A stretch of DNA of 64,000 nt from IMG/VR virus record IMGVR_UViG_3300009104_001210, positions 124,001 to 188,000 of that record, one strand, 5' to 3'. Shown here one piece after another: positions 34,267 through 63,330 of the stretch; position 1 is the stretch's first letter; each line of letters starts with the position of its first letter. Under the pieces are notes generated by a model, which was given only the letters and a program-made list of their open reading frames with translations, did not search any database and was not told where the DNA came from. The position numbers and the translations under genes were made by a program.

Positions 34267-34912
34267 TTATAAAGAATTAAGTTCAACTGTAGCAGATATA
34301 GTTGAGGAACAGCTTGTAGAAAAAGTTTTTCAACAACTAGTCCTTCCTACAGGTAGTACACCAATCGGATTATATAAAGAACTTGCTAAAAGAAATTTAA
34401 ATTGGTCTTATGTTAGAACATTTAATCTTGATGTTTATATTATGAATCCAAATCATTCACAAAGTTATCAAACATTTATGAAGGAAAATTTATTTAATAG
34501 AATTAATATCTATCCTGATAATTGTCATTTCCCATTTAGACCTACTTTAGCATATGAAGATAAAATAAATTATTTTGGTGGAGTTGATTTGTGTATATTG
34601 GGTATAGGTAGTAATGGTCATATAGCATTTAACGAACCTGGTTCTTCATTTAAGTCAAGAACAAGAGTAGTAGATTTAGACGAACAAACTATACAAGACA
34701 ATTCAAGATTTTTTGATTCAGTAGATGATGTACCTAAACAAGCAATAACTATGGGAATAGGAACTATAATGGAATCAAAGAAAATAATATTAATGGCAAG
34801 TGGAGATCATAAAAAAGACATTTTAGAAAAAGCATTAAATGGTAAAGTAACTGAAGATGTACCAGCATCAGTATTACAAACACATAAAAATGTAGAAGTG
34901 TATTATCATTGA
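34244..34912 (+). CDS. nagB: Glucosamine-6-phosphate deaminase
   Basis: LPTGSTP, TFNLD, GIGSNGHIAFNEPG, TMGIGTI, PASVLQTH. Confidence 0.9.
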   Translation: MKVKKLNSYKELSSTVADIVEEQLVEKVFQQLVLPTGSTPIGLYKELAKRNLNWSYVRTFNLDVYIMNPNHSQSYQTFMKENLFNRINIYPDNCHFPFRPTLAYEDKINYFGGVDLCILGIGSNGHIAFNEPGSSFKSRTRVVDLDEQTIQDNSRFFDSVDDVPKQAITMGIGTIMESKKIILMASGDHKKDILEKALNGKVTEDVPASVLQTHKNVEVYYH

Positions 34913-35712: not shown

Positions 35713-35872
35713 AAGGAAAGAGACGTTAGGTGAATATTTATCTAGGAGACTTAATAAAAATATAGATCCTGACGAATTAGATTTCTATATTCAACAATAT
35801 AAGATAAAGGAAGGTCATTCAGAATGGTCAGAACGGTTTCAAAGAAATTTTTGGGTAGAAGATGAAGACTAA
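35684..35872 (+). CDS. Hypothetical protein
   Basis: Coupled ORF. Confidence 0.5.
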   Translation: MKTYEQKKYRRKETLGEYLSRRLNKNIDPDELDFYIQQYKIKEGHSEWSERFQRNFWVEDED

Positions 35873-36185
35873 ATGTTTATTATGTACTGCTTTAACTGAG
35901 CCGGGTCAAGGATTCTATGACCATTTAGAAGATGTTCATATGATGCCTATTAGGCGGAAGAGAATTGTACAACCTGAGAATTGGATTCATGGTATGTCTT
36001 TAGAGAAAAAGGATATGATGAGAGAAGAAACACACGATGAATGTATGGAAAGATTTAAATTTAATCATCCTGAATATGGTACTGAACAATGTTGGTGTCC
36101 TGATTGTCTTGGTGGAGAAACATTAGAAATGGTAAATAAAATTTGTTCTAAACATGGACAACTTTATATAAAGGGTAAACATTGA
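35862..36185 (+). CDS. Zinc-finger-like hypothetical protein
   Basis: CLLC..HLEDVH and CWCPDC. Confidence 0.55.
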   Translation: MKTKCLLCTALTEPGQGFYDHLEDVHMMPIRRKRIVQPENWIHGMSLEKKDMMREETHDECMERFKFNHPEYGTEQCWCPDCLGGETLEMVNKICSKHGQLYIKGKH

Positions 36186-36186
36186 A

Positions 36187-37626: not shown

Positions 37627-38126
37627 TGATTAATAAGATAATGATTGTAGCGCACCCTGATGATGAAGCACTATTTGGTGGCGCTGAATTATTATCACAC
37701 CCAAAAGAATATAAAGTTGTAGTAGTAGATGAATATCACAATGATGTTAGACAAAAAGAGTTTAAGGATTCCATGCAATTTATAGGAATTACAGATTTTG
37801 AACATTGGACAGGTTATAAAGGTGGAGAAGATTATCATAGAGAAAAACTTATTTATGAGTTATTGAGAGTATTGAGAGAAAAAAAATGGGAAAAGATTGT
37901 AACTCATAATAGAGCAGGTGAATATGGTCACCCAAGACATAGAGCATTGCATGATATATTAAATCATTTAAGACCTGAAATACTATGGCAGTTTGATAAA
38001 GGTAAAGAAAGATTACCACAAGATTTATTAATTAAGAAAAGAGATTTATTAAAAGTATATGGAAGCCAAAGAGATGTTTTAGATTGGTTTAGTCCCTGGT
38101 ACGAGAAAATAACGAAGGTAAATTGA
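37626..38126 (+). CDS. PIG-L/LmbE family deacetylase
   Basis: AHPDDE and GHPRH motifs. Confidence 0.8.
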   Translation: MINKIMIVAHPDDEALFGGAELLSHPKEYKVVVVDEYHNDVRQKEFKDSMQFIGITDFEHWTGYKGGEDYHREKLIYELLRVLREKKWEKIVTHNRAGEYGHPRHRALHDILNHLRPEILWQFDKGKERLPQDLLIKKRDLLKVYGSQRDVLDWFSPWYEKITKVN

Positions 38127-39163
38127 TGAGAAGAGCATTAGCATATGATGACATAAATATTACACCTAAATATTCAGATGTGGAACATAGAGACGACATA
38201 AATATTACTACAAGATTTACTAAGAAAACTTTATTAGATATACCAATTGTATCTTCACCTATGGATACTATTACTGGATTTGATATGGCTTTTGCTATGA
38301 TGGTGTTGGGTGGAGTTGGTGTTGTACATAGATTTAATACTATTGAAGAACAATCATTGATAATGAATCAGTTACATACTGAAAAGTATGATCATTGTGA
38401 ATTACCATTATCTGCAGCTATTGGAGTTACAGGGGATTATTTAGAAAGGGCACAAGAATTAATTAAGAACGGATGTAATGTTCTACTTATAGATGTAGCG
38501 CATGGACATCATAAATTAGTAGGAGAAGCAATTGAAGAGGTCAAAACCAAGTTATCAGGAGTTGAAATCATTGCGGGATCAGTTGCGACAGGAGAAGCGT
38601 GTGAATACTTATGTGAAAAAGGAGCGGACTCGATTAGAGTCGGAATTGGAAATGGAAGTTTATGTGAAACGAGAATTAGAACGGGTGTCGGAATCCCTCA
38701 AGTGTCTGCTCTCATTGATTGCGTCGCCGTTGCTGATAGGTTTGATGTTCCTATTATTGGTGATGGTGGGATCCGTAATGTTGGTGATGTGTGTAAAGGA
38801 CTTGCTTGTGGGGCTGACTCGATTATGTTGGGCTCCCTGTTATCAGGTACTAAAGAAACTCCAGGCACGATTGAAAAAATAGGCCAATGGCCGAATGAAA
38901 TGTTACATAAAAAATATAGAGGTTCAGCATCATTGGACTCTAAAAAATCAAGAGGGGATAATAAAAATGTCGAAGGTAATCACAAAGTTATACCATACAA
39001 AGGGAAGGTCAAAAGAATTATACAAGATATACAAGAGGGAATTCGTAGTTCTTTCAGCTATGTTGGTGCTAACAATTTTCCTGAGTTTTATTCTAAAGTA
39101 GAGTTAATAGAAGTTACAAGAGCAGGAAATATTGAAGGTATGCCACACCTTCTTAATACTTAA
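38123..39163 (+). CDS. IMP dehydrogenase/GMP reductase family protein (no CBS domains)
   Basis: SSPMDT, IDVAHGH, GIGNGSLCETR, DGGIRN; YRGSAS/NVEG looks closer to GuaC-type. Confidence 0.9.
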   Translation: MMRRALAYDDINITPKYSDVEHRDDINITTRFTKKTLLDIPIVSSPMDTITGFDMAFAMMVLGGVGVVHRFNTIEEQSLIMNQLHTEKYDHCELPLSAAIGVTGDYLERAQELIKNGCNVLLIDVAHGHHKLVGEAIEEVKTKLSGVEIIAGSVATGEACEYLCEKGADSIRVGIGNGSLCETRIRTGVGIPQVSALIDCVAVADRFDVPIIGDGGIRNVGDVCKGLACGADSIMLGSLLSGTKETPGTIEKIGQWPNEMLHKKYRGSASLDSKKSRGDNKNVEGNHKVIPYKGKVKRIIQDIQEGIRSSFSYVGANNFPEFYSKVELIEVTRAGNIEGMPHLLNT

Positions 39164-42245: not shown

Positions 42246-42317
42246 GGCCCCATCGTCTAATGGTGAGGACGTCGCCCTTTCAAGGCGGAGATATGGGTTC
42301 GACTCCCGTTGGGGCTA
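42246..42317 (+). tRNA. tRNA-Glu(TTC)
   Basis: Full cloverleaf; loop CT-TTC-AA; no encoded CCA. Confidence 0.92.
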
Positions 42318-42318
42318 C

Positions 42319-42401
42319 GGGCAGGTAGCAAAGCGGTTAAATGCACCAAACCGTAAGTTTGGCGTCGTGAGACTACGGTGGTTCGAATCCATCCCTGCCC
42401 T
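42319..42401 (+). tRNA. tRNA-Tyr(GTA), atypical C33/G38/U73
   Basis: GGGCAGG/CCTGCCC acceptor, long variable arm, loop CC-GTA-AG. Confidence 0.8.
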
Positions 42402-42402
42402 C

Positions 42403-42475
42403 GGGGCTGTAGCTCATTTGGGAGAGCGCTTCCCTTGCACGGAAGAGGCAGCAGGTTCGATTCCTGTCAGCTCCA
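42403..42475 (+). tRNA. tRNA-Ala(TGC)
   Basis: G3:U70, loop CT-TGC-AC. Confidence 0.93.
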
Positions 42476-42476
42476 C

Positions 42477-43070
42477 ATGAAAAATCTATCTAGATCTGAA
42501 ATAAGAGAAATAAAGAATAACCAATCAGAGTTGTATATGGAAAATGATAACTTTAAAGTTATTATACCATATACACATGATGCAGTTAAGATATATGGTA
42601 AAGGTACTAGTTGGTGTGTTTCTTGGGCAAAAGACGAAGACTATCAGTTTTATAATAAAACAGGTAAAATTCTTTTAATACTTAAAAAGAATGTTCATAT
42701 TAAAGATAATACTGAAATAGATGATGTGTGTTATAAAGTATCTATGTGGATGCCATATCAAAAATATTTGCCACTATATAGAAATTTTGGAAAAGGTGGT
42801 ATAGAAGATATAGCTAAAAGATATGAGTCCGATAAAGAGTTATATAAAAGCGTATTAAATGGTTATGTAAATTCGGTTGATGGTATTACTATTCATAAAA
42901 TAACAGCAGATTTTGAATATTATGATGCTGATGATGCGCATTGTTTTATGCCTGTAAAGTATATAGAAGGAGATAAAGTAGTTTGCATAGATAGAGATTG
43001 GGAATTAGATTGGGAAATATTTGATAGTATAAGATATAAGTATGAATATGAGTGGCAATTTGAAGGATAA
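42477..43070 (+). CDS. Hypothetical protein (GTSWC motif)
   Basis: ATG one base after the tRNA-Ala discriminator; upstream track start lies inside tRNAs. Confidence 0.6.
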   Translation: MKNLSRSEIREIKNNQSELYMENDNFKVIIPYTHDAVKIYGKGTSWCVSWAKDEDYQFYNKTGKILLILKKNVHIKDNTEIDDVCYKVSMWMPYQKYLPLYRNFGKGGIEDIAKRYESDKELYKSVLNGYVNSVDGITIHKITADFEYYDADDAHCFMPVKYIEGDKVVCIDRDWELDWEIFDSIRYKYEYEWQFEG

Positions 43071-43074
43071 TAAT

Positions 43075-43148
43075 GTGCTGGTGCCGGAGTGGTCTAACGG
43101 GGTGGGTTGCAAACCCATTATTCACAGGTTCGAATCCTGTTCAGCACT
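43075..43148 (+). tRNA. tRNA-Cys(GCA)
   Basis: Loop TT-GCA-AA, U73. Confidence 0.9.
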
Positions 43149-43301
43149 CATAACTAAGGAGAAATACCAATGTAATATACAACACTAAATATAAGATTAG
43201 GGTTTAGCAGTACCAATATATAAACTGTCGGTGTTTAAAGTACACCACAAAATTTAGTGTACGGATGGTATCTAAAGAGGGACGGAGGCGGGAAAAAATT
43301 A

Positions 43302-43374
43302 GCCACTTTAGCTCAGTTGGTAGAGCAGCTCACTTGTAATGAGCAGGTCCTCAGTTCGAGTCTGAGAAGTGGCT
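43302..43374 (+). tRNA. tRNA-Thr(TGT)
   Basis: GCCACTT/AAGTGGC acceptor, loop CT-TGT-AA. Confidence 0.93.
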
Positions 43375-43385
43375 CAAAAATAATT

Positions 43386-46962: not shown

Positions 46963-47460
46963 ATGGCTAAAAAAGTAGATGTTAAAGAATATCAATGTAA
47001 GTTAATTAAGGTTTTAGATGGAGATACTATAGATTGTTTTATTGATTTAGGTTTCAATCTGAAAACTAAAAAACGTATACGATATATGGGAATAGATACT
47101 TGGGAATCAAGAACAAGAGATTTAGAAGAAAAGGCAAAAGGTTTAAAAGCTAAAGCTCGTAATAAAGAATTATTAGAAGGTGGAGTTTTTAAACTTAAAT
47201 CATTTGGTACAGGTAAGTTCGGTAGAGTGTTAGGTGAAGTGTTTGTGGATCCTGATATTGTAGGAGAACATATTCAAGAGTGCATAGTAAATGATGATAG
47301 TGATATTGATTTAGACCATGATGGTTGGGTAAGTGTTAATGATATCTTAATCGAAGAAGGACACGCTTACGAATATCATGGTGGTAAGAAAAAAGATTTC
47401 AAAAAAGAAATCAAAGAAGAAAAAGCTAACGCTAAATTAGTTAAAGGTAATGAAGTATGA
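46963..47460 (+). CDS. Thermonuclease (SNase-like) family protein
   Basis: VLDGDTI, IRYMGIDTWE, KFGRVLG. Confidence 0.8.
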   Translation: MAKKVDVKEYQCKLIKVLDGDTIDCFIDLGFNLKTKKRIRYMGIDTWESRTRDLEEKAKGLKAKARNKELLEGGVFKLKSFGTGKFGRVLGEVFVDPDIVGEHIQECIVNDDSDIDLDHDGWVSVNDILIEEGHAYEYHGGKKKDFKKEIKEEKANAKLVKGNEV

Positions 47461-47702
47461 AAACATTAAAATATTTTTCAGCAACTTGGTGTGGTCCTTG
47501 TAAGGCGTTTAAACCTGTTATGAATGAAATTGCATCAGAAGGGCATTTAGTAGAATTTATTGATATAGATAGATCACAGGATGTAGCATCAAAATATGGA
47601 ATTAGATCTGTACCTACTGTAATAATAGAACAAGGTGGACAAGAAGTTGACAGATTTTCAGGTGCTTTGCCAAAACAATTAGTATTGGAGAAAATAACCT
47701 AA
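47457..47702 (+). CDS. trxA: Thioredoxin
   Basis: WCGPC, IRSVPT. Confidence 0.9.
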   Translation: MKTLKYFSATWCGPCKAFKPVMNEIASEGHLVEFIDIDRSQDVASKYGIRSVPTVIIEQGGQEVDRFSGALPKQLVLEKIT

Positions 47703-47864
47703 ATGCCTAGAATTTTTGGTAATGAAGAACCTTCGAAAACAGGTAAGAGTACAAGACAAGGAATGGGTAGAGGAACTAAGTGGGGAACTAAACCTGCTGG
47801 TAAAGGTAATAAGAAAGCATTAACCCGTTATAAGAAAAAATATCGTGGCCAAGGAAAGAGATAA
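47703..47864 (+). CDS. Small basic phage protein (53 aa, not in ORF track)
   Basis: KSTRQGMG...KKYRGQGKR. Confidence 0.6.
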   Translation: MPRIFGNEEPSKTGKSTRQGMGRGTKWGTKPAGKGNKKALTRYKKKYRGQGKR

Positions 47865-48573
47865 AGTCGCAAATAGTTTATGGATAGGTAAGAAATTATT
47901 ACCACAAAATATAATATCTATAAAATCTTTTTTACAAAATGGATTTGATTATAACTTATATGTTTATGATGAAGTAAAAGATATTCCATCAGGAGTAAAT
48001 GTTCTTGATGGTAATGATATATTACCTGATTCTGCTATATGGTACTACGGCAAAGGATTTAATAAAGGATCACCTTCAGGTTTTTCAAATGAATTTAGAT
48101 TTACTTTCCTATATGATATTGGTGGATTATGGACTGATACTGATATAGTTTTATTGAAAGAATTCAATTTAGAACAACCTTTAATTTTTATAAGTCAAGA
48201 AAATCCTGATCAAAGTATAATGGCAACTACTTCTTTAATATATTCAAAACATCCAAAATTAGAAATTTTTAAAGATGCTTTAAATGAAATAACTTTTAGA
48301 AATAAAGAAAGAATTAAACATGGAGAAACTGGTCCAGATTTACTTGATTATTTAGTAAAGAAATATCAATTAGAAGAATTTGTTTTAGGTTATAATGCGT
48401 TTTGTTCAATAGGTTGGCATGAAATAGATAAGTTAATTAATGGAACTAAACTTTCAGAAGAAGCTATAGGATTACATTTGTTTAATGCTAGATGGGAAGC
48501 TGATGGAATTGATATTGATAATTATAGTACATCTAAATCTATTCTTACTGAATTGAAGAAAAAGTATTTATGA
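47845..48573 (+). CDS. GT32-like (alpha-1,4) glycosyltransferase
   Basis: SLWIG, FSNEFRF..LYDIGGLWTDTD, TGPDL. Confidence 0.8.
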   Translation: MAKERDKVANSLWIGKKLLPQNIISIKSFLQNGFDYNLYVYDEVKDIPSGVNVLDGNDILPDSAIWYYGKGFNKGSPSGFSNEFRFTFLYDIGGLWTDTDIVLLKEFNLEQPLIFISQENPDQSIMATTSLIYSKHPKLEIFKDALNEITFRNKERIKHGETGPDLLDYLVKKYQLEEFVLGYNAFCSIGWHEIDKLINGTKLSEEAIGLHLFNARWEADGIDIDNYSTSKSILTELKKKYL

Positions 48574-49523
48574 AATTAAGTAGAGAGAAAAGAAGAGAAG
48601 TAGCATTATATCAAAGTGTTTATTTTTATGATAGGAATACAAGATTTAATACTGATATTCATCCAGATGATTTTTTTCATACAACTAAATTTAGATCTTA
48701 TTTTGATGATGATAATAGAATTAACGGTATTGTTCCTATAAATAAAATAGAGCAATCTATTTTTTTTAAAGATAAATATTATTATCCTAAAACTTATATT
48801 AAAAATCCAAAGTTAGAAGGAATTTGGTTTATTAAACCAACGGATGGGTCTTTGGGTAATGATATTGAAATAACTGATGATTTAAGTTCAGTAAAAAATA
48901 ATAAAAAAGCTATTTATCAACAATCAATTGATAATCCTTTATTACATAAAAATAAAAAAATAGATTTTAGAACTTTTTTATTATTACAAACATTTGAGGG
49001 AAAATTTAGAGCATATTTTTATAAAGATTCTATGTTAAGATGGACAACACTTGATTATAAAAAAGATGATTTTACATTGGAACGCCAAATAACAAATTAT
49101 CTTGCAAAAAGAGATGGTAAATTTTTTGGTAATACTATGGTTAGGGCATATTCTAAACACACATATCATTATTATAAAGAGTTACATGAAACTATGAAAA
49201 ATATTATTGTAGATATTTCAAAAAGTATTTTTGATAGAGTGAATAATAAAACACAAAGAAATATATTTCAATTGTTTGGTGTAGATTTTATTCCTGATGA
49301 AGATAAGAATGTTTGGTTATTAGAAATGAATGGTAATCCAGGTCCTTATTTACATTTAGATAGACCATTAACAAAACAATTAAAGAATTGGACTTTAGAT
49401 ATAGTTGAAGATATATTTGATTTAACAGTATATCCAATGTATTATGGAAGAAAAAAAAAGTTAGGTGAATTTGAATTAGTATTTGAAAAAGATTTACAAT
49501 TTGAAAAATGGATAGAAGTATGA
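48570..49523 (+). CDS. Tubulin-tyrosine ligase/polyglutamylase (TTL) family ATP-grasp
   Basis: WFIKP...G.G, QQSIDNPLL, KIDFR, FQLFGVDF, WLLEMNGNP. Confidence 0.85.
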   Translation: MKLSREKRREVALYQSVYFYDRNTRFNTDIHPDDFFHTTKFRSYFDDDNRINGIVPINKIEQSIFFKDKYYYPKTYIKNPKLEGIWFIKPTDGSLGNDIEITDDLSSVKNNKKAIYQQSIDNPLLHKNKKIDFRTFLLLQTFEGKFRAYFYKDSMLRWTTLDYKKDDFTLERQITNYLAKRDGKFFGNTMVRAYSKHTYHYYKELHETMKNIIVDISKSIFDRVNNKTQRNIFQLFGVDFIPDEDKNVWLLEMNGNPGPYLHLDRPLTKQLKNWTLDIVEDIFDLTVYPMYYGRKKKLGEFELVFEKDLQFEKWIEV

Positions 49524-49987
49524 ATATTAACAGAAAAAGAGATAGACATATAGTAGATTATTTAAATAATCATTTTTATTGTAAATTAGGTATATCAAAA
49601 GTTCATGGTATAGGAGTTTTTGCATTAAGAGATATACCTGCTGGTATTGATCCGTTTGTTTTACCTAAAAAAGATAGGTTGGTTACAGTATATAAAGCAA
49701 GTTTGAAAAATTTAGATGAGAATATTAAAGAATGGTTAGCTGAAAAATTTATAAATGATGATAAAGTTCAAACAATTTTACTTACTGATACTTTACAAAA
49801 ACAGTTTAAATACTATTTTAATCATAATGAAAAACCAAATTTAGAGTGGAATACACCAAAACATCGCCATCCATGTATGCCACCTTGTCCAAAATGTGGC
49901 GGACAAAATTTTATTACATTACAAGATATAAAAAAAGATGAAGAAATTTTTGTTAATTATGCTATTGACACTAATATTTATAATTGA
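49520..49987 (+). CDS. SET domain methyltransferase
   Basis: SKVHGIGVFA, YFNHNEKPN, DIKKDEEIFVNY. Confidence 0.8.
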   Translation: MNINRKRDRHIVDYLNNHFYCKLGISKVHGIGVFALRDIPAGIDPFVLPKKDRLVTVYKASLKNLDENIKEWLAEKFINDDKVQTILLTDTLQKQFKYYFNHNEKPNLEWNTPKHRHPCMPPCPKCGGQNFITLQDIKKDEEIFVNYAIDTNIYN

Positions 49988-50019
49988 CATATTTATACTT
50001 AGGAATATGGAGTTAATTA

Positions 50020-51354
50020 ATGACATGGATTAATACTAAAACGGTATTCACTTGGAATACTAAGGACAAAAAGTACGAAGAAACTCTTAATGAGGGTTAT
50101 GATTATACTGGTCCTACTGCTGAATGTTTTGGTTGTTTTATAGCAGGAACAGCTGTACCTACCTCAGATGTAACATATGAGTTGATAGAAAATTTAAAAG
50201 TTGGTGATACAGTACTTACAGTTAATACAAATACAAAACCATTCACATTAGAAGAAAATAAAATACTTGAAATAGCTACACCTGTTCATGAGAATATGGT
50301 TGAGATAAAATTTGATGCTAAAATGTTCAAAGATGGTATGCCAACATATAAGTATAGTTTAGATGAAGCAAAACCATCTCCCTCTAAGATAGCAGTTGGT
50401 CCGAAGAAATTTCCAGAGTTCTGGCTTGAAGTTTCAGAACTAGATAAACTTTCTGATGATGAGAAAGAAGCAGAGTTTAATAAATATATTGACGCCACTT
50501 GGAAGGATTTAGTAAATACAAATACATTTGATCACCCATATTTGGTAAAAAATAAAGGTTGGTGTTCATATAAACCAAGTTTAACTAAAGAAACATATAG
50601 TATGGATGTTGGTCAGCTTGAAGTTGGTGATATTTGTTATGTGCTCAATCCTGTAAGGGGAAGAAGTCCTTTTACTGAGGTAAAGATTGTTAGTATTGAA
50701 GAAAAAAATGAAGAAACCCAAACATATAACTTAGCTAGTGTTGAAAATAATCATAATTATTTAGCTAATGGTGTATTAGTTCACAATAAAGAAAGTTTGG
50801 GTGGTGAAGATGTAACTATTTTAAGTAGTTCTGTTGACCACGCTGATGGAGAAGTACATGCTTCTATGTCAATTGATGATAAAGTTTTAGCAGCTAGTAT
50901 TTCAGGTTTACCTGATACAGATGTAGCATCAGAATTTTTATTGTGGGAATATACGGGCAGTGATATTGCTTCTCAAATTACATTAGTTACTGCTTCAGTT
51001 GATTATATTATGTCTTCTTCTCGTAACAATTGGTTAAATATTGATTGTAAAAATGGTAGATCTGATACTTTTAGAATTACACCTGGACACCCATTATTAG
51101 TTAAGAGTGAAAGTTATGGTGAGGGATATGGGCTTCCTGGTTCTACAGGATCAGCAGCACTTACAGGATCTGTTTGGTATTTTGATTATGCAGGAGACAT
51201 TAATACAAATTATAAACTTTTAAGTTCTTCATTGGAAGAGGTAGACATTGAATCAATTACACCATATAGTGCGTCTGAATCGTCTAGCTTTTTTAGATTT
51301 GATATAGAACCACAGGATACATATTTCGTAGATCACATATTAATACATAATTAG
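50020..51354 (+). CDS. 38-aa peptide fused to two tandem Hint (intein/BIL-like) domains
   Basis: Hint1 C39 CFIAGT, TFDHP, VHN256; Hint2 S259 SLGGED, TPGHP, terminal IHN444. Confidence 0.8.
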   Translation: MTWINTKTVFTWNTKDKKYEETLNEGYDYTGPTAECFGCFIAGTAVPTSDVTYELIENLKVGDTVLTVNTNTKPFTLEENKILEIATPVHENMVEIKFDAKMFKDGMPTYKYSLDEAKPSPSKIAVGPKKFPEFWLEVSELDKLSDDEKEAEFNKYIDATWKDLVNTNTFDHPYLVKNKGWCSYKPSLTKETYSMDVGQLEVGDICYVLNPVRGRSPFTEVKIVSIEEKNEETQTYNLASVENNHNYLANGVLVHNKESLGGEDVTILSSSVDHADGEVHASMSIDDKVLAASISGLPDTDVASEFLLWEYTGSDIASQITLVTASVDYIMSSSRNNWLNIDCKNGRSDTFRITPGHPLLVKSESYGEGYGLPGSTGSAALTGSVWYFDYAGDINTNYKLLSSSLEEVDIESITPYSASESSSFFRFDIEPQDTYFVDHILIHN

Positions 51355-52276: not shown

Positions 52277-53001
52277 GTTTATATAAACATCCAATAAAAT
52301 TCGATCTAGATAAATTATTAAAAGAAAAAGACTATGCTGAATCAGTAGTTACATATGATTCAGGATTTAGAAATCATTGTATATCTTTGTTAGGTAGAAA
52401 AGAAGAAGAAATGGAAGGTTGGAATCTTTATTTAGCAGAAATGAATAGGCATAGAATATGGAAAGATTATAATAGACAAGTGAATGTATTATATGATACA
52501 GAAATCTTACAAGATATTCCTTTTGATAGAAAACATTTACCTTATATGAATAGTGTATTTGATATATTTAATGAAGGAACTGAAGTTTTAGTTGCTAGAT
52601 TAATTCGAAGAGAATCACATTCTTCATACGGCATACATAGAGATTATGGAAAAGGTATGGAAGAACTTGAAGATTCTAAGAAGATGATGTGGAGATTTCA
52701 GATTCCACTTATATCAAATAAAGACTGCTACTTAATTATTTTTAAAGATCATGTAGTTGACAAATGGAAAGAGTTATATGGTGAATATCAATTAGAAGAT
52801 TTTTTAGATAAACCATCTGATGATTTTCAGGTTCATCATTTAGAGGATGGTTATTTATATCACTTTAAAGTTTGGAAGTATGCACACACGGTATGGAATA
52901 TGGGGGAAACAGATAGATATACATTAGTAGTTGATACAATACCAAATGAGTGGATAGAAAATTGGGCAAAGGAAAATTTAAATGAAGTTTTACCTTCATA
53001 A
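52273..53001 (+). CDS. Asp/Asn beta-hydroxylase-like 2OG-Fe(II) oxygenase
   Basis: GIHRD, RFQIPL, AHTVWN, RYTLVVD. Confidence 0.7.
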   Translation: MSLYKHPIKFDLDKLLKEKDYAESVVTYDSGFRNHCISLLGRKEEEMEGWNLYLAEMNRHRIWKDYNRQVNVLYDTEILQDIPFDRKHLPYMNSVFDIFNEGTEVLVARLIRRESHSSYGIHRDYGKGMEELEDSKKMMWRFQIPLISNKDCYLIIFKDHVVDKWKELYGEYQLEDFLDKPSDDFQVHHLEDGYLYHFKVWKYAHTVWNMGETDRYTLVVDTIPNEWIENWAKENLNEVLPS

Positions 53002-53950
53002 AGATATTTTATATGAAGATCAAGCGTGGAAAACTGTTAAGTTTTTATTAGATGTAAAAAAAATATCTAATGAGGTTGTAGATATGCACAATATAGAATC
53101 TATAAAGCAATTAAATGTTTCAAGTGATGATATATGTTTTGCTAGATTTGGTCATCATTTTGATGATAAGATAGCAACTAATAAAGCATATGATGTATTA
53201 ACTCAAAAATTTAATAAAATATATCCTTCAAAAGACGCATATTATTATTATGATGATAAATTAAAGCAATATGAATTTATGTTAGAAAATGATATACCTT
53301 GTTTGAAAACATATTATGTAGGTAGTAAAGAAGAGATAGAAAAATTAAATATAAAATTTCCTATAGTTACTAAAAAAACTTGGGGGGCTGGAACTGAACA
53401 AGTTAATAAGTGGGATGATTATGAATCTATTGTTGATAATAAAGATACTCGAAGTTGGACAGGGGGATCTATATTTCCATGTTTAGTTCAAGAATATAAA
53501 GATGTAGATTATGATATTAGAGTTAGAATTTTAAACTCTAAAGTTTTCTTTACTAAAAGAATGCACGAATTTAAAACAAAAAATAAAGATAATTTTCCAT
53601 ATGGTACAAAAGAGATTCTTAAAAAAGATAGAATAAAATATCATTTACCACCATATGAAGTTCCTGTAGCATTACCAATAAATGATTTAGCAGAAGTAGA
53701 AGATATTATACCTATAGTAGAAAAATTACATAAGATTCAAAATGAAAAATTGAATAGTAATTTTGTGGTGTGGGATATTCTTAGAACAAATGAAGGAATA
53801 AAAATTCTTGAATTTAGTCATGTTACAGTATATAAAAGTTTTCCACAAATTTATTATGATATAGAATATAAAGAAGCAAATAAATTAACAATAAAAAATC
53901 GTGAACATTTTTTTTATTTGTATAACGAAATATTAAAAGGATTAATATGA
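52982..53950 (+). CDS. RimK-like ATP-grasp ligase
   Basis: DDKLKQY, IPCLKT, FPIVTK, LVQEY, DIRV, WDIL, ILEF. Confidence 0.7.
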   Translation: MKFYLHKDILYEDQAWKTVKFLLDVKKISNEVVDMHNIESIKQLNVSSDDICFARFGHHFDDKIATNKAYDVLTQKFNKIYPSKDAYYYYDDKLKQYEFMLENDIPCLKTYYVGSKEEIEKLNIKFPIVTKKTWGAGTEQVNKWDDYESIVDNKDTRSWTGGSIFPCLVQEYKDVDYDIRVRILNSKVFFTKRMHEFKTKNKDNFPYGTKEILKKDRIKYHLPPYEVPVALPINDLAEVEDIIPIVEKLHKIQNEKLNSNFVVWDILRTNEGIKILEFSHVTVYKSFPQIYYDIEYKEANKLTIKNREHFFYLYNEILKGLI

Positions 53951-55512
53951 AGAAAGTTATTATAGTTGGTGGTGGATTTGCAGGTTACTTAACAGCGTTG
54001 TTTTTAAATAAAAAATTTCCTAAATTAAAAATTGATATAATAAAATCATCAGATAAAGAACAAATTTCTGCTGGAGAACAAACAGGCAAAGAACAACTAC
54101 AATTGTTTTTTGAATCATTAGGAATTGAAGAAACTGAATGGTTTAGTAGAACAAAATCTTTTTTAAAAATAGGTAATTCTTTTGTTGGGTGGGGAAACCG
54201 TGAAAATTTTGATCCTCGAGTTGGTGGACCAGATGTAGTTAATCATAGTTTTGTAATGGAAAATAAATTATTACCTTTACTTAGGAATGGTGGTGGTATG
54301 AAATCCGTAAAGGATTCTATGAAATATAATGATAAGTTACATACTGAATTATATCAAAATAGTTTTTTAGAAACACCCATAGATAATACGGATGATTATA
54401 TAGATAGTTTTAAAAAACACTTTAAAAATAGTTTTTTTAATAGAAAGAATAATAGAGCCATAGCTCATATGCATGATTGGTTAGAGATAGGTAAATTTAT
54501 AGAAACTAAGTTTGATGATAATGTTAAAATAATTACTGATCATATAACTGATGTGGTTGTAGATAAAAAAAATAATACTATAGAATATCTTGTTAATAAA
54601 GATAAAGAAAAGATTAAAGCAGATCACTACGTAGATTGTACAGGTATTAGTAGAATTTTGATTTCTAAACTTAGTAAAGTTGTAGATATTAGTGATGAAT
54701 ATCCTGTAAATAGTGCCGTATTTGGTCCAGTAGAATATATAGATAGAACTAAAGAGATGGTGCCAACCTTATATACTACTGCTTTTAAAAATGGTTATTC
54801 ATTTAAAACACCATTACAACATAGGATAGGAACAGGATATGTCTATTCAGATAAGTATATTAGTAAAGATGAAGCAATAGATGAGATAAATGATTATTGG
54901 GATGGTAGATTTAAGTCAGATCAAGTTAATCATTTAAAATGGACTCCATCTTATGTAGTTAAACCTTTTCAGAAAAATTGTAGCGCTGTAGGATTAGCAG
55001 GACAATTTGATTGTCCAATGGAATCTACAGTATTTACTCAGATATCAACTGCTCTTCAACAATTAGGAAATTATTTAAATAGAGATAATAAATTATTATA
55101 CATGAATCGTTCTGATATAAGAGATGAAGATATGTTAAATTATTGTAATACTTGGACTGAATATACTTTTCATAATACAAGACATTTTAAACAAATGATG
55201 TTTTATACTACAAATAGAGATGATAGCGAATTTTGGAAGAATATTAAAACACTTAATTATTCTGATATTTTTTATAAAAAATTAAGTTTCTTTTTAGACA
55301 ATTCATTTGATTATATAATAGAAAATAGAAATAAGTTTCCTGATTATACTCCACCAACAAATTTTAATATTAATGAAGATAGATTTTGGAGAGTATATCA
55401 AAAAGGATTTAAAGGATATTTTGATTATATGGGAATAAGGGGTGTAGGACATAGTATGATATTAGATGTTCATAATTGGTTAATGATTCTTGCGTATAAA
55501 AAATACATTTAA
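53947..55512 (+). CDS. Tryptophan halogenase-like flavoprotein
   Basis: IVGGGFAG, AGEQT, VDCTG, PLQHRIGTGYVYS, PMESTV. Confidence 0.8.
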   Translation: MKKVIIVGGGFAGYLTALFLNKKFPKLKIDIIKSSDKEQISAGEQTGKEQLQLFFESLGIEETEWFSRTKSFLKIGNSFVGWGNRENFDPRVGGPDVVNHSFVMENKLLPLLRNGGGMKSVKDSMKYNDKLHTELYQNSFLETPIDNTDDYIDSFKKHFKNSFFNRKNNRAIAHMHDWLEIGKFIETKFDDNVKIITDHITDVVVDKKNNTIEYLVNKDKEKIKADHYVDCTGISRILISKLSKVVDISDEYPVNSAVFGPVEYIDRTKEMVPTLYTTAFKNGYSFKTPLQHRIGTGYVYSDKYISKDEAIDEINDYWDGRFKSDQVNHLKWTPSYVVKPFQKNCSAVGLAGQFDCPMESTVFTQISTALQQLGNYLNRDNKLLYMNRSDIRDEDMLNYCNTWTEYTFHNTRHFKQMMFYTTNRDDSEFWKNIKTLNYSDIFYKKLSFFLDNSFDYIIENRNKFPDYTPPTNFNINEDRFWRVYQKGFKGYFDYMGIRGVGHSMILDVHNWLMILAYKKYI

Positions 55513-60537: not shown

Positions 60538-63330
60538 ATGAAAAACAAACGTAATCTAATCTCATTGGTAATAACATTTCTAATGCCTATGTTCATTTAT
60601 GGACAAAGTGTTAGTGGTACGGTTGCTGATGAGGCAGGGAATCCTTTGGCTGGAGCTAATGTAGTTGTACAAGGAACTGATTTGGGTGCCGCTTCTTTGG
60701 AAGATGGTACTTATTCGATTAAAATCGGAGAAGGTTCACATACACTAATAGCTTCTGTTATCGGGTATGAATCATCTTCACAAACAGTAGATGTTAGTGG
60801 AGATATTAGTCTCGACTTTAGCTTAGCGGTTTCCGCAGTCGAGATGTCAGCATTGGAAGTTTTGGCTTCCCGTGCAGGCGAAAAAACACCTGTTGCTTAT
60901 ACTACGGTAGAAAAAGCAGATATGGAATTCCGTCTTGGTAGTCAAGACCTTCCAATGGCGCTTAATCTAACACCATCAGTATATGCTACGCAACAAGGTG
61001 GTGGTGCGGGTGATGCTCGTATCAATGTTCGAGGTTTTAATCAACGGAATGTAGCAGTAATGATTAATGGAGTACCACAAAATGATATGGAAAACGGTTG
61101 GGTTTATTGGTCCAATTGGGATGGTGTAGCAGATGCTGCACATTCTATCCAGATGCAACGTGGTTTAAGTGCTGTTAATTTAGCTACACCTTCCATTGGT
61201 GGAACTATGAACATAATTACAGACCCTACCTCTCACATAAAGGGTGGTAAGGTAAAACAAGAAGTTGGTGCTGGTGATTTTCTTAAAACTACAGTAAACT
61301 ATAATACTGGCTTGATAGGTGATAAATTTGCCTTGAGTGGTACAGTAGTACGTAAAACTGGTGGTGGAATCATTGACAAAACGTGGACAGATGCTTGGGC
61401 ATATTACTTTGGTGCAAGTTACGCACTAAATGCTGATAACCGATTTGAATTATACGCAATCGGTGCGCCACAGCGACACGCACACAATCTATATAAACAG
61501 AATATTGGTGCATATGATGCTGATTTTGCTGCAAGTATAGATGGATATGATACTGAAGCACTTGGTGAAGATGGTAAGTTCAAGGATGTTGGACGTACAT
61601 TTAATCAAAATTGGTCTCCAGTAGACCCATCATATACAGGTAAACAATACTATTATATGTATGGTGCTAAAACAGTAGCAAGACACGATCCCAACTTTAT
61701 TAACGAAAGAGAAAATTTCTTTCACAAGCCTTTAGTAAACCTAAATCATTTTCTAACTATTAATGACAAAACAATGTTAAGTTCAGTATTGTATTGGAGT
61801 GGTGGTTCAGGTGGTGGTACAGGTACTTATGGTAGGATTCCTACTATGGATGCTGATGGTAATCTTGGTGATGATGACTATAAATTTTATTATGGTCGTT
61901 CTCCCTGGACACGTGATTGGAATGCTCTTATCGCTATGAATAGTGGTGATTCTGATACAGTTTATGTAGACAAAAGAGTAATCACACGCACACATGGTAT
62001 TGATAATAATCAATCTGTAGGTATTTTGAGAAATAGCATTAATCGTCAGAATACATATGGCCTTATTTCTAAACTTAATTATGATGTAAGTGATGAACTT
62101 CAATTACAATTAGGTATAGATTGGAGAACTGCTGGTATAGAACACGCACGTGAAGTACGTGATCTAATGGGTGGTGATTATTATGTGGATTATGCTGATG
62201 ATAATGTACCTGATGGTAAAAGAGTTGGATTAGGTGATATAATCGCTTATCATAACTCAACCACAGTTGATTGGTTAGGTGGATTCTTACAAGGAGCTTA
62301 TGCTTCAGGTCCACTTTCAGCCTATGGTATGGTAGGATTATCACAGATTGGATATTCATATCAAGACCATTTTACTGTAGCCGATGAGAAGATTGTAGCA
62401 GATCCTATTTCCACTTTACAATGGAAAGGTGGGGCAATGTATGATGTTACTGATAACGTTTCAGTTTTTGGTAATTTTGGTATTGTTGAAAAGCCACCAA
62501 TTATGGATAATGTAATCTATTATGATGGTACGGTTGCTTCAGATCCTGCAAATGAAAGATTTGTAAGTTCAGAAGCTGGTGCTCACTACGCGACGGATAA
62601 AGTAGCAGTTAAAGTGTCTGCATATAATACAGATTGGAAAGACAGAAACCTTACCAAATCTGTAACAAGCGGACAAGGTTCAAGCGGTGATACTGATGTG
62701 ATTTTCCTTTCGGGGATAAATCAGAATCATAAAGGTGTTGAAGTTGAAGCTTCTACACAAGTACTTGATGTACTTAACTTACAAGCTATAGTAAGTCTTG
62801 GTACTTGGAAGTTTGTAGGTGATGCAGCAGGTAACTATCAAGAAGATGAGTTTAACGAAGAAGGTCAAGTTATCGGACAGACAACTACACCTTATTCTTA
62901 CGCACTTGATGGTTTGTTTGTTGGTGATATGCCTCAAACATCTTACGCACTTGTTGGAACGCTTACACCAATTAAAGGTCTAAAAATGCAAGCAGTATAC
63001 AAACAGTATGATAATAATTATGCTGATTGGAGTCCTGACGCTCGTGAGTATGATGGCTCAGATGCTGGTGCAGATAGAGAACAAGTATGGATGGCACCTG
63101 GATATTCCAGAGTTGACTTACATGCTTCATATGCTCTACCTTCAATTGGTGGTATGGATTTTACCGCATTTGCTCATGTATTTAATGCAACAGATGCAAC
63201 ATACATTCAAGATGCAGTAGATCATAGTCAGTATAATAGCTACGGAGATAAAACTCACGCAGCACACAACGCTGAAGTTTTTCTTGGAACACCAAGATAC
63301 TTTAACGCAGGAATTTCTGTAAATTTCTAA
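60538..63330 (+). CDS. TonB-dependent outer-membrane receptor with N-terminal CarboxypepD_reg-like domain
   Basis: Signal peptide, VSGTV..GNPLAGANVVV, plug (INVRGFNQRNVAVMINGVP), beta-barrel ending in Phe. Confidence 0.92.
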   Translation: MKNKRNLISLVITFLMPMFIYGQSVSGTVADEAGNPLAGANVVVQGTDLGAASLEDGTYSIKIGEGSHTLIASVIGYESSSQTVDVSGDISLDFSLAVSAVEMSALEVLASRAGEKTPVAYTTVEKADMEFRLGSQDLPMALNLTPSVYATQQGGGAGDARINVRGFNQRNVAVMINGVPQNDMENGWVYWSNWDGVADAAHSIQMQRGLSAVNLATPSIGGTMNIITDPTSHIKGGKVKQEVGAGDFLKTTVNYNTGLIGDKFALSGTVVRKTGGGIIDKTWTDAWAYYFGASYALNADNRFELYAIGAPQRHAHNLYKQNIGAYDADFAASIDGYDTEALGEDGKFKDVGRTFNQNWSPVDPSYTGKQYYYMYGAKTVARHDPNFINERENFFHKPLVNLNHFLTINDKTMLSSVLYWSGGSGGGTGTYGRIPTMDADGNLGDDDYKFYYGRSPWTRDWNALIAMNSGDSDTVYVDKRVITRTHGIDNNQSVGILRNSINRQNTYGLISKLNYDVSDELQLQLGIDWRTAGIEHAREVRDLMGGDYYVDYADDNVPDGKRVGLGDIIAYHNSTTVDWLGGFLQGAYASGPLSAYGMVGLSQIGYSYQDHFTVADEKIVADPISTLQWKGGAMYDVTDNVSVFGNFGIVEKPPIMDNVIYYDGTVASDPANERFVSSEAGAHYATDKVAVKVSAYNTDWKDRNLTKSVTSGQGSSGDTDVIFLSGINQNHKGVEVEASTQVLDVLNLQAIVSLGTWKFVGDAAGNYQEDEFNEEGQVIGQTTTPYSYALDGLFVGDMPQTSYALVGTLTPIKGLKMQAVYKQYDNNYADWSPDAREYDGSDAGADREQVWMAPGYSRVDLHASYALPSIGGMDFTAFAHVFNATDATYIQDAVDHSQYNSYGDKTHAAHNAEVFLGTPRYFNAGISVNF

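What the first reader, a model, noticed from the sequence alone, without database searches (positions are those of the whole stretch)
50020..51354. Protein made of a 38-aa peptide plus two back-to-back intact Hint domains
Seen: Hint1 (C39...TFDH...HN256), then only K-E, then Hint2 (S259...TPGH...HN444-stop). There is no C/S/T at Hint1 +1 and no C-extein after Hint2, and the peptide ends ...AECFG at the scissile bond. Established: Hint/BIL domains form an N-terminal (thio)ester that can be hydrolysed or transferred to a nucleophile (Hedgehog cholesterolysis). Inference: an autocatalytic device generating an activated Gly-terminated peptide for conjugation, with Hint2 enabling a second cleavage or ligation. 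I know no described function for this architecture.
Basis: partly seen in the sequence, partly recalled or inferred. Interest (0 to 1): 0.8.

Follow-up and report, generated by a model that had tools for sequence, protein, structure and literature searches.

The report
Mobile Hint inside self-cleaving phage protein
This marine phage gene encodes a short conserved peptide fused to a previously unrecognised self-cleaving (Hint) domain, and in this phage a second, mobile intein-like Hint domain has landed in the cleavage junction. The family is widespread in ocean phages, unannotated, and of unknown purpose.

Summary
ORF 50020-51354 (444 aa) is a 38-aa peptide, a Cys1 Hint (C39...TFDH...HN256), a Lys-Glu linker, and a Ser1 Hint (S259...TPGH...HN444-stop).

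Comparative data change the reading. The basic gene is a 190-225 aa protein: a conserved leader plus only the Ser1 Hint, ending exactly at His-Asn-stop. It is common in uncultured marine myovirus contigs and has no Pfam hit.

- Of 83 complete family genes, 52 have no upstream Hint, 28 have one and 3 have two.
- The extra Hints always sit 0-7 residues upstream of the invariant Ser1. They belong to five lineages.
- Their presence needs at least 5-11 gains or losses on the host-domain tree.
- They are under purifying selection and are often far more alike than their host alleles, so they move between alleles.

Hint1 is therefore a BIL-like mobile insertion (Lys at +1, no endonuclease) in a resident Hedgehog-like self-cleavage junction.

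Processing itself is inferred, not shown, and the role of the products is unknown. The conserved neighbours are TTL- and RimK-like ATP-grasp ligases and glycosyltransferases.

The ancestral scissile bond is Glu/Asp|Ser, and some alleles have no leader at all.

The parts
50009..50012 (+). GGAG ribosome-binding site, 7 nt upstream of the ATG
   Evidence: Read directly from the sequence.
50020..51354 (+). Whole ORF: 444 aa plus the TAG stop
   Evidence: It is 100% identical in L008.
50020..50133 (+). Type-a leader peptide, M1-G38 (MTWINTK...GPTAECFG). It includes the family-conserved Cys36.
   Evidence: The leader is nearly invariant across Hint-free alleles (A4). There are 0 changes in 38 codons against L026. 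AF2 predicts a beta-hairpin at residues 9-22.
50125..50136 (+). C36-F-G-C39: a CxxC motif spanning the Hint1 N-terminal junction
   Evidence: The possibility of a redox trap is inference only.
50134..50787 (+). Hint1 (C39-N256): an inserted, BIL-like, type-I Cys-Hint
   Evidence: Pfam, NCBIfam and Foldseek matches. It is absent from 52 of 83 alleles. It falls in lineage cluster I.
50351..50503 (+). Strain-variable loop inside Hint1. In other samples these 153 nt are replaced by 27 nt. The AF2 model is disordered over roughly aa 104-136.
   Evidence: Joint seen in runs X3 and X5. P0002/L026 alignment. pLDDT.
50524..50535 (+). Hint1 block B, T169-F-D-H172. It lies inside the AXH-like stretch, residues 167-210.
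50782..50793 (+). H255-N256 | K257-E258: the end of Hint1 and the two-residue linker. The +1 residue is Lys.
   Evidence: Lys at +1 is seen in most Hint-bearing alleles.
50794..51351 (+). Hint2 (S259-N444): the family's resident Ser1 Hint domain, which ends at the stop codon
   Evidence: hhalign E 2e-10. Foldseek. Invariant S259, H357 and H443. Alignment to Cys1 Hints.
50905..50961 (+). Clade-specific insert GLPDTDVASEFLLWEYTGS (aa 296-314)
   Evidence: It is nearly invariant. It is shared as LPDxD...W with phage cargo-Hint proteins.
51079..51090 (+). Hint2 block B, T354-P-G-H357
   Evidence: H357 is invariant.
51346..51354 (+). H443-N444-stop: the terminal His-Asn with no C-extein
   Evidence: All but a few family members end in HN-stop. 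P0035 and P0078 end in HS.
47845..48573 (+). DXD glycosyltransferase (Gly_transf_sug, weak hit). A syntenic neighbour in almost all family loci.
48570..49523 (+). TTL-family ATP-grasp ligase. It lies directly upstream of the family gene in most type-a loci.
   Evidence: Pfam TTL E 3.6e-26. Synteny.
49508..49987 (+). SET-domain protein, lying between TTL and the Hint gene in this lineage
52982..53950 (+). RimK-like ATP-grasp (weak hit). A recurrent downstream neighbour in both subfamilies.

Best explanation
**What it is.** The gene is one allele of a widespread, unannotated gene family of uncultured marine T4-like or jumbo myoviruses.

**The family's basic product.** It is a 190-225 aa protein with three parts:
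- a short conserved N-terminal peptide (type a, MKWINTK...C-Gly(n)-Glu/Asp; or type b, MK.YKLMWGGK...)
- joined directly to a Hint domain that starts with an invariant Ser
- which ends exactly at His-Asn-stop.

This makes it a Hedgehog-like protein, or an intein without a C-extein.

**Inferred mechanism of the basic protein.** Ser1, helped by the block-B Thr/His, shifts the preceding peptide bond to an ester. With no +1 nucleophile present, the ester is resolved by water or by an unknown acceptor. That separates the leader peptide from the Ser-Hint.

**The window's allele.** A second, canonical Cys1 Hint (C39...HN256) has been inserted into the flexible linker two residues upstream of Ser259. 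It has A-type-BIL-like traits: no homing endonuclease and Lys at +1.

**Inferred processing of this allele.**
- Hint1 removes itself by thioester formation at Gly38|Cys39 and Asn256 cyclisation at Asn256|Lys257. This happens either without ligation or, less likely, with BIL-type aminolytic ligation.
- Hint2 then trims the remaining Lys-Glu (or leader-Lys-Glu) at Glu258|Ser259.

The host bond is meant to be broken anyway. A Hint that only cleaves at both ends is therefore harmless there. This explains why such Hints accumulate, singly or in tandem, at exactly this junction, and why they need no +1 Cys/Ser/Thr.

**Shown versus inferred.** The architecture, the insertion polymorphism, the mobility signature and the conservation of catalytic residues are shown. 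All chemical steps, and the biological role of the products, are inferred.
For: **Hint-free alleles are the majority.**
- An exhaustive HMM search with the Hint2 profile found leader+Hint2-only proteins: P0074, P0071, P0079 and P0077.
- A leader-targeted search found about 60 clusters of 216-226 aa with no Pfam domain. P0236 has none even at E<=1.
- Of 83 complete genes, 52 are Hint-free, 28 have one inserted Hint and 3 have two.

**The insertion site is fixed.** It is always 0-7 residues upstream of the invariant Ser1. The residue after HN is Lys in most alleles.

**Hint2 looks catalytically intact.**
- Ser1, block-B His and the penultimate His are invariant. The terminal Asn and the block-F Asp are nearly invariant.
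- Ser1 aligns with Cys1 of paralogous phage Hints.

**Hint folds are supported**.

**The upstream Hints are sporadic and mobile.**
- On the Hint2 tree, presence of an upstream Hint needs at least 11 changes, and at least 5 on strongly supported branches.
- There are five unrelated Hint lineages. The same lineage occurs in host alleles of classes a, b and c.
- Synonymous divergence of the Hint is often far below that of its host domain in the same pair: L033/L034, 0 against 0.277; L051/L057, 0.088 against 0.467.

**Both parts are under purifying selection.** dN/dS is 0.15-0.42 for Hint2 and 0.12-0.62 for inserted Hints.

**Established chemistry.** A-type BIL domains end in His-Asn and cleave their C-terminus without a +1 nucleophile (PMC7765530). 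My own recollection of Dassa et al. 2004, J Biol Chem 279:32001, is that they can also splice.

**Closest structures to Hint1.** These are Tetrahymena BUBL BIL2 (6y75/6tmm) and the C. thermocellum BIL (2lwy).
Against: - No processing has been observed. The only expression evidence is one 246-nt metatranscriptome contig on 50952-51194, which could be DNA carry-over.
- The Hint2-only model has low confidence (pLDDT 57.5). Hint2 does better in the full-length model, at 75-90 over most of 280-444.
- Leaderless alleles (MG|C...) show that the leader is not always needed. No allele is a bare Met-Ser-Hint. The model does not explain what the mandatory N-terminal acyl group is for.
- Strict retention of His-Asn at the very C-terminus has no role in a cleavage-only scheme.
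- In the window's own lineage, the only available comparison (against L026) gives Hint1 dN/dS of about 1.2. That is 36 changes in 176 codons, against 10 in Hint2 and 0 in the leader. Hint1 may be drifting here, although its catalytic residues are intact.
- Ser1 esters are less reactive than thioesters, so cleavage may be slow or may need a partner.
Confidence: 0.55

Rival explanations
1. The two Hints are a designed pair that produces a thioester-activated, Gly-terminated 38-aa peptide. The peptide is conjugated to a target, as in BUBL or Hedgehog, and Hint2 provides a second cleavage or ligation.
For: - Hint1 has an intact Cys1, TxxH and HN, and its nearest structure is the BUBL BIL2 conjugation domain.
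- The leader is strongly conserved.
Against: - 63% of alleles lack Hint1 altogether.
- The Gly end is not conserved. Type-a Hint-free alleles end in Glu/Asp in 27 of 27.
- Leaderless alleles exist.
- The leader has no ubiquitin-like fold or Pfam hit.
- The leader is not found on other proteins, apart from one probably chimeric hit, P0287.
Confidence: 0.1
2. Hint1 behaves as a true splicing element. It excises and ligates leader-FG to KE-Ser259, by BIL-A-type aminolysis or with Ser259 as a displaced nucleophile. This restores the host protein, which is only then processed, or not, by Hint2.
For: - Ser1 and the whole of Hint2 stay under purifying selection in Hint-bearing alleles.
- In some alleles (P0022, P0053) Ser follows His-Asn directly, which is a canonical +1 position.
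- From memory, A-type BILs can splice without a +1 nucleophile (Dassa 2004, cited in PMC7765530).
Against: - The +1 residue is Lys here and in most alleles.
- The linker to Ser1 varies from 0 to 7 residues.
- Leaderless alleles have nothing meaningful to ligate.
- The review states that A-type BILs generally cleave but do not ligate.
Confidence: 0.2
3. Hint2 is a catalytically silent, exapted Hint-fold domain, for example a structural or binding module. Only the inserted Hint1 is active, and Ser259 is conserved for structural reasons.
For: - Hint2 carries a large, nearly invariant, clade-specific insert (GLPDTD...EFLLWEYTGS) and many invariant Ser, Asp and Glu residues that are not Hint catalytic residues.
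- Related Hints sit at the C-termini of proteins matching a PHROG annotated as virion structural protein.
- A terminal His-Asn with nothing to cleave is not needed for catalysis.
Against: - The complete N-terminal catalytic set (Ser1, Thr/Ser-x-x-His, block-F Asp) is retained across more than 80 diverged sequences.
- No allele lacks an N-terminal acyl extension on Ser1.
- The -1 residue is Glu/Asp in 27 of 27 type-a alleles.
Confidence: 0.15
4. The gene is decaying selfish DNA: stacked intein-like remnants with no host function.
For: - The protein consists almost only of Hint domains.
- Hint1 dN/dS is about 1.2 in the window lineage.
Against: - Hint2 and the leader are under purifying selection (dN/dS 0.15-0.46).
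- They are syntenic across two diverged subfamilies.
- The reading frame is intact in all 83 complete genes.
Confidence: 0.04

Closest known systems
A-type bacterial intein-like (BIL) domains, e.g. Clostridium thermocellum BIL (PDB 2lwy)
   Same: - Hint1 has Cys1, TxxH, a C-terminal His-Asn and a non-nucleophilic +1 residue.
- It has no homing endonuclease.
- It sits in a variable position of a non-housekeeping protein.
- 2lwy is among the best sequence and fold matches.
   Different: - It is found in phages, not bacteria.
- It is inserted immediately in front of another Hint domain.
- It shows an intein-like presence/absence polymorphism and a horizontal-transfer signature among alleles.
Hedgehog/Hog C-terminal autoprocessing domains
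   Same: - Hint2 is the C-terminal domain of its protein.
- It has a position-1 nucleophile and a block-B Thr/His.
- It is preceded by a cargo that would be released through an ester intermediate.
   Different: - The nucleophile is Ser, not Cys.
- The cargo is only 20-45 residues.
- There is no sterol/adduct-recognition region.
- The protein ends at an intein-type His-Asn.
- It carries a clade-specific LPDTD...LLWEY insert.
Tetrahymena BUBL loci (BIL-ubiquitin-like; PDB 6y75, 6tmm)
   Same: - They are the best structural match to Hint1 (E 4e-9).
- BILs in a row process small intervening polypeptides.
   Different: - There is no ubiquitin-like domain between or before the Hints.
- Only Lys-Glu separates them.
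- The leader is too short for a beta-grasp fold.
Class 1 mini-inteins
   Same: - Hint1 is an in-frame insertion absent from most alleles.
- It has Cys1, TxxH and HN.
- It is under purifying selection and has a mobility signature.
   Different: - The +1 residue is Lys, not Cys/Ser/Thr.
- The host is not a conserved replication or repair protein.
- The insertion site is a flexible linker, not an active site.
- No endonuclease is present or nearby.
Pre-toxin HINT (PT-HINT, PF07591) of polymorphic toxins
   Same: - Homologues of Hint1 carry precomputed PT-HINT hits.
- Both have an autoproteolytic release role.
   Different: - No toxin domain follows.
- The window protein itself has no PT-HINT hit at E<=10.
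Phage cargo-Hint proteins (phrog_38766 'virion structural protein'; two paralogues in this genome)
   Same: - They belong to the same Hint clade as Hint2: the LPDxD...W insert and the D[VI]EP.D.YF...VHN end.
   Different: - They have Cys1, a 150-330 aa cargo and a short Lys-rich tail after His-Asn.
- Hint2 has Ser1, a peptide-sized cargo and no tail.

Membership tests
Hint (Hedgehog/intein) superfamily - Hint1 | Significant match to Hint/intein profiles and to the Hint fold | tested here: met
   - Pfam Intein_splicing: 38.6 bits against a cut-off of 35.8.
- TIGR01443: 22.9 bits against 15.6.
- Foldseek: E 4e-9, target-normalised TM 0.87.
Hint (Hedgehog/intein) superfamily - Hint2 | Hint fold and blocks A, B, F and G | tested here: met
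   - hhalign probability 96.9%, E 2e-10.
- All top PDB fold hits are inteins or BILs, from a low-pLDDT model.
- Motif-by-motif alignment to Cys1 Hints.
- No curated profile detects it.
Canonical (class 1) intein - Hint1 | In-frame insertion absent from homologous alleles | tested here: met
   52 of 83 alleles lack any upstream Hint. Hint-free and Hint-bearing alleles interleave on the tree.
Canonical (class 1) intein - Hint1 | Cys/Ser/Thr at position 1, block-B TxxH, and C-terminal His-Asn | tested here: met
   C39, T169-H172 and H255-N256.
Canonical (class 1) intein - Hint1 | Cys/Ser/Thr at +1 of the C-extein | tested here: not met
   The +1 residue is Lys257. It is Lys in most Hint-bearing alleles.
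Canonical (class 1) intein - Hint1 | Protein splicing, i.e. ligation of the flanks | not testable with these tools
   This needs expression and mass spectrometry.
A-type BIL domain - Hint1 | His-Asn end with a non-nucleophilic +1 residue, no endonuclease, and a variable host context | tested here: met
   Structural and sequence similarity to 2lwy.
A-type BIL domain - Hint1 | Membership in the BIL-A sequence clade (type-specific motifs of Amitai et al. 2003) | tested here: inconclusive
   No BIL-A-specific profile was available. 2lwy matches at E 0.0038 by sequence, and mini-inteins match almost as well.
Hog/Hedgehog autoprocessing domain - Hint2 | C-terminal Hint preceded by a cargo, with a position-1 nucleophile and TxxH | tested here: met
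   S259, T354-H357, and the domain ends the protein. The nucleophile is Ser instead of Cys.
Hog/Hedgehog autoprocessing domain - Hint2 | Adduct (sterol) recognition region after the Hint; transfer of the cargo to a small-molecule nucleophile | tested here: not met
   The protein stops right after His-Asn. Whether transfer chemistry occurs cannot be tested here.
BUBL (BIL-ubiquitin-like) | Ubiquitin-like domain flanked by BIL domains | tested here: not met
   No ubiquitin-like hit. Only a 38-aa leader precedes the Hints and only Lys-Glu lies between them.
PT-HINT polymorphic-toxin module | Toxin domain C-terminal to the Hint | tested here: not met
   Nothing follows Hint2. What follows Hint1 is another Hint.

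The most novel reading that the evidence does not exclude
**The reading.** The family is a Hint-driven peptide-maturation system, analogous to RiPPs (ribosomally made, post-translationally modified peptides).
- The conserved leader is the product, not a leader in the usual sense.
- The Ser1 Hint releases it, either as an ester-activated peptide or as a peptide ending in Gly(n)-Glu/Asp.
- The conserved neighbouring C-terminus-modifying ATP-grasp ligases then extend or couple this new C-terminus. These are TTL directly upstream in type-a loci and a RimK-like gene downstream in both subfamilies.
- Alternatively, the conserved Cys 3-7 residues upstream captures the ester as a thiolactone.
- Either route would yield a phage-made modified peptide that acts on the host or on other phages.

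**What is compatible with it.**
- Glu/Asp at -1 in 27 of 27 type-a alleles.
- TTL adjacency.
- An invariant leader.

**What weakens it.**
- Leaderless alleles exist.
- The synteny is confounded by shared ancestry.
Probability: 0.12. Interest if true: 0.85.

Novelty: new variant of a known kind. Interest (0 to 1): 0.6.

Why it matters
- **A hidden Hint family.** Current domain libraries miss an abundant phage family of Hint domains. It has a minimal architecture: a peptide-sized cargo, a Ser1 nucleophile and termination at His-Asn. It is a natural counterpart of the engineered inteins without a C-extein that are used for N-terminal cleavage.
- **A new niche for mobile Hints.** Endonuclease-free, non-splicing, BIL-like Hints can colonise the scissile junction of another self-cleaving domain. 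There, cleavage alone is enough to be harmless. This offers an explanation for tandem Hint arrays, and a model for how BIL domains persist and spread without a +1 nucleophile.
- **A testable link.** The constant association with TTL- and RimK-type ligases and glycosyltransferases suggests a connection between Hint self-cleavage and C-terminal protein or peptide modification in phage infection.

Tried and rejected
- **Cultured phages.** tblastn of the window protein and of a Hint-free allele against 50,697 phage records gave no match. No annotated relative exists there.
- **Cellular genomes.** The scan found only distant Hints in Nannocystis. There is no prophage or host clue.
- **Leader peptide.**
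  - It has no PDB sequence match.
  - The one other weak match in the genome lies inside a thiamine-enzyme-like ORF and is a chance hit.
  - P0287 shares only the first 26 residues on a 1.4-kb contig and is probably chimeric.
- **Hint2-only structure prediction.** It came out with low confidence. The fold claim rests mainly on the profile comparison and the motif alignment.
- **hmmsearch of the Hint2 profile against PDB sequences.** It found nothing meaningful.
- **IMG/VR scans for the family and for TTL.** They returned only two contigs. TTL-family co-occurrence could not be tested independently of phylogeny.
- **Promoter and terminator scan.** It was uninformative: 35 promoter-like sites found against 36 expected, and no terminators.
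- **dN/dS of the window against L026.** It rests on very few synonymous changes and should not be over-read.
- **Readthrough or frameshift into the next ORF.** The next ORF starts at 51362 in another frame. Rejected, because nearly all homologues also stop right after His-Asn.
- **Literature searches.** They found no paper describing this family.
Full report
**1. The observation**

The window is bases 124001-188000 of a 216,422-bp IMG/VR virus record that CheckV rates 100% complete.
- The record has 31% G+C and nearly all its genes are on one strand.
- It encodes a tail sheath, a baseplate-wedge-like protein, ribonucleotide reductase and a family-B DNA polymerase.
- The polymerase's nearest cultured relative is Microcystis phage Mel-JY01 at 47.5% identity, followed by T4-like cyanophages at about 33%.
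- It is therefore a large uncultured marine myovirus.

ORF 50020-51354 is real.

**2. Are both halves Hint domains?**

Hint1 (39-256):
- It passes Pfam Intein_splicing and NCBIfam intein_Cterm above their curated cut-offs.
- In the full-length AlphaFold2 model (mean pLDDT 70.9) it superposes on BIL and mini-intein structures.
- The best matches are Tetrahymena BUBL BIL2 and the C. thermocellum BIL, at E 4e-9 to 1e-7.

Hint2 (259-444):
- It gets no hit from Pfam, NCBIfam or PHROGs.
- A profile of 26 Hint2 sequences aligns to a profile of the family's Cys-Hints with hhalign probability 96.9%, E 2e-10. The alignment runs from the VGD strand through TxxH to the terminal VHN.
- A Hint2-only model has low confidence (pLDDT 57.5), but it finds only inteins and BILs in the PDB.
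- A multiple alignment with paralogous phage Hints puts S259 in the Cys1 column, T354/H357 in the TxxH columns, and H443-N444 on the His-Asn end.

**3. What the relatives show**

A word-indexed search found 70 homologues, all from metagenomes. They carry one, two or, as it later turned out, zero canonical Cys-Hints in front of a much better conserved C-terminal domain. Mean column identity is 58% for that domain against 28% for the Cys-Hints.

Further searches:
- An exhaustive HMMER search of 1.84 billion representatives with the Hint2 profile found proteins that are only leader plus Hint2: P0074, P0079, P0071 and P0077.
- A search restricted to the leader found about 60 clusters of 216-226 aa with this Hint-free architecture. 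Some were seen on dozens of contigs and none has a Pfam domain. P0236 has no Pfam hit even at E<=1.
- A metagenome scan, added to the earlier loci, gave 83 complete genes. 52 are Hint-free (27 with leader type a, 25 with type b), 28 have one inserted Hint and 3 have two.

The inserted Hints always sit in the linker 0-7 residues upstream of the invariant Ser1. Lys follows their His-Asn in most cases.

**4. Hint1 is a mobile insertion**

- On a maximum-likelihood tree of Hint2 sequences, presence of an upstream Hint needs at least 11 state changes, and at least 5 on well-supported branches. Hint-bearing and Hint-free alleles interleave at very short distances, for example L018 with two Hints next to Hint-free L032.
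- The inserted Hints fall into five unrelated lineages. The window's lineage (type I) occurs in host alleles of leader classes a, b and c.
- In several pairs the Hint is much less diverged at synonymous sites than its host domain. For L033/L034 dS is 0 against 0.277, for L051/L057 0.088 against 0.467, and for L051/L067 0.227 against 0.597. This is the signature expected if Hints are exchanged among alleles.
- Inserted Hints are generally under purifying selection (dN/dS 0.12-0.62), as is Hint2 (0.15-0.42).
- The window lineage is a partial exception. Against its 95%-identical relative L026, Hint1 has 36 changes in 176 codons (dN/dS about 1.2), Hint2 has 10 and the leader has 0.
- Contigs from other samples carry the L026/P0002-type allele, in which window bases 50351-50503 are replaced by 27 nt. 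That segment is a loop which is disordered in the model.

**5. How it most likely works**

Established chemistry:
- A Hint with a position-1 Cys or Ser and a block-B Thr/His converts the preceding peptide bond into a (thio)ester.
- Without a +1 nucleophile, the ester is resolved by hydrolysis or by an external nucleophile.
- A C-terminal His-Asn can cleave the following bond by succinimide formation.
- A-type BILs do this without a +1 nucleophile (PMC7765530). My recollection is that Dassa et al. 2004 showed they can also splice.

Applied to this protein, all of which is inference:
- The basic leader-Ser-Hint protein cleaves itself at Glu/Asp|Ser (type a, 27 of 27) or X|Ser (type b).
- In the window allele, Hint1 cuts itself out at Gly38|Cys39 and Asn256|Lys257.
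- Hint2 then removes the Lys-Glu stub.

The host junction is destined to be broken. A cleaving-only Hint is therefore neutral there. This accounts for four things:
- the fixed insertion site
- the absence of a +1 nucleophile
- the tolerance of tandem insertions
- the continued conservation of Ser259 in Hint-bearing alleles.

I give the whole scheme about 0.55. The architectural and evolutionary part is near-certain. The chemistry is plausible but untested.

**6. What remains unexplained**

- Leaderless alleles such as L018 start 1 nt after the upstream gene and read MG|C.... The leader is therefore dispensable in some lineages. Yet no allele is a bare Met-Ser-Hint, so some N-terminal acyl group on Ser1 seems always to be required.
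- The protein ends at His-Asn in almost every member, which a cleavage-only mechanism does not need.
- The nearly invariant insert GLPDTDVASEFLLWEYTGS is shared in looser form with cargo-Hint proteins of the same phages. Those proteins match a PHROG annotated as virion structural protein. The insert has no assigned role.

**7. Context**

The gene sits in a conserved block.
- Type a: DXD glycosyltransferase, (2OG oxygenase), TTL-family ATP-grasp, (SET), the gene itself, a GT11-like gene, then a RimK-like ATP-grasp.
- Type b: a 362-aa protein, the DXD glycosyltransferase, the gene itself, then after one or more genes a RimK-like ATP-grasp.

TTL and RimK enzymes add amino acids to protein C-termini ending in Glu. 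That statement comes from established knowledge of those families and was not tested here. Type-a cleavage would expose ...Gly(n)-Glu/Asp. This is suggestive, but it is confounded by shared ancestry of the contigs. I keep it as the novel reading at probability 0.12.

**8. Comparison with known systems**

- Hint1 works like, and by sequence traits qualifies as, an A-type-BIL-like domain.
- Hint1 fails the +1 nucleophile criterion for a canonical intein. It does show intein-like presence/absence polymorphism.
- Hint2 works like a Hog domain, but it has Ser1, no adduct-recognition region and an intein-type end.
- Neither BUBL (no ubiquitin-like domain) nor PT-HINT (no toxin domain) membership holds.
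- No paper in the searchable library describes this family or Hints inserted in front of Hints.
- The family is absent from cultured phage records and from one genome per prokaryotic species.

**9. Verdict**

- What is there is a new variant of a known kind: a cryptic Ser1 Hint family with peptide-sized cargo, carrying in this phage a mobile BIL-like Hint at its scissile junction.
- Interest is 0.6.

Noticed in passing
window 50518-50649 (aa 167-210 of the ORF); also P0082 594-705 and P0086 497-594: The Pfam AXH model (ataxin-1/HBP1 module, PF08517) hits the block-B region of Hint1 at E 1.2e-15 (58.5 bits against a cut-off of 33). It aligns almost end to end (model positions 1-110 of 116) to type-I Hints in P0082 and P0086. 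The PDB AXH domain of HBP1 shares DHPFYVKNKGWSS..PSLT with the phage sequence. This points to homology between the eukaryotic AXH domain and this Hint lineage. No searchable paper mentions both. From memory, CATH/Gene3D may already place AXH in the Hint topology; I did not verify this.
   Followed up: partly
outside the window: G000:C1:2007-2975 and 4029-5144 (L003 724-1692, L004 598-1713): The same genome encodes two cargo-plus-C-terminal-Cys1-Hint proteins of the LPDxD...W clade, with short tails after His-Asn. They lie next to a Peptidase_S74-like tail-fibre chaperone end and match phrog_38766, 'virion structural protein', at E 7e-8 and 1e-13.
   Followed up: partly
window 50351-50503: Strain polymorphism inside Hint1. 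Contigs from two independent marine metagenome runs replace these 153 nt with 27 nt, which is the P0002/L026 allele.
   Followed up: yes
window 50125-50136: The family-conserved leader Cys36 lies at -3 of Cys39, giving C-F-G-C across the Hint1 N-junction. P0003 has C-G-E-C. This resembles the CPGC redox trap engineered in the DnaE intein (PDB 3nzm appears among the fold hits). A thioredoxin gene lies at 47457-47702. Redox control of cleavage is speculation only.
   Followed up: no
window 60538-63330: A 930-aa phage ORF with a signal-peptide-like start, CarbopepD_reg_2 and a TonB-dependent-receptor Plug domain, i.e. SusC-like. It is an unusual auxiliary gene and hints at a Bacteroidota host.
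   Followed up: partly
window 48570-49987 and 53947-55512: A tubulin-tyrosine-ligase-family ATP-grasp (E 3.6e-26) and a SET-domain protein lie side by side, and a tryptophan-halogenase homologue (E 2e-58) lies nearby. These are eukaryote-like or secondary-metabolism-like enzymes in a phage.
   Followed up: partly
window 42246-43375: A cluster of five tRNA genes: Glu-TTC, Tyr-GTA, Ala-TGC, Cys-GCA and Thr-TGT.
   Followed up: no
P0082 (751 aa), P0086 (651 aa): The reverse arrangement occurs in related metagenomic proteins: a large N-terminal region, then an LPD-clade Hint, then one or two canonical Cys-Hints directly after its His-Asn. Hints therefore also accumulate downstream of resident Hints.
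   Followed up: no
L016, L017, L047, L061 (P0050-P0059): One inserted Hint lineage (type d) has lost Cys1 (Glu instead) and the block-B His, but keeps His-Asn. It is nearly identical between L016 and L047, with 2 changes in 155 codons. It may be a domesticated or C-cleavage-only Hint.
   Followed up: no
window 32986-39163: A run of nucleotide and amino-acid metabolism genes: a glutamine-synthetase-like gene, an amidophosphoribosyltransferase-like gene and IMPDH/GMP reductase.
   Followed up: no
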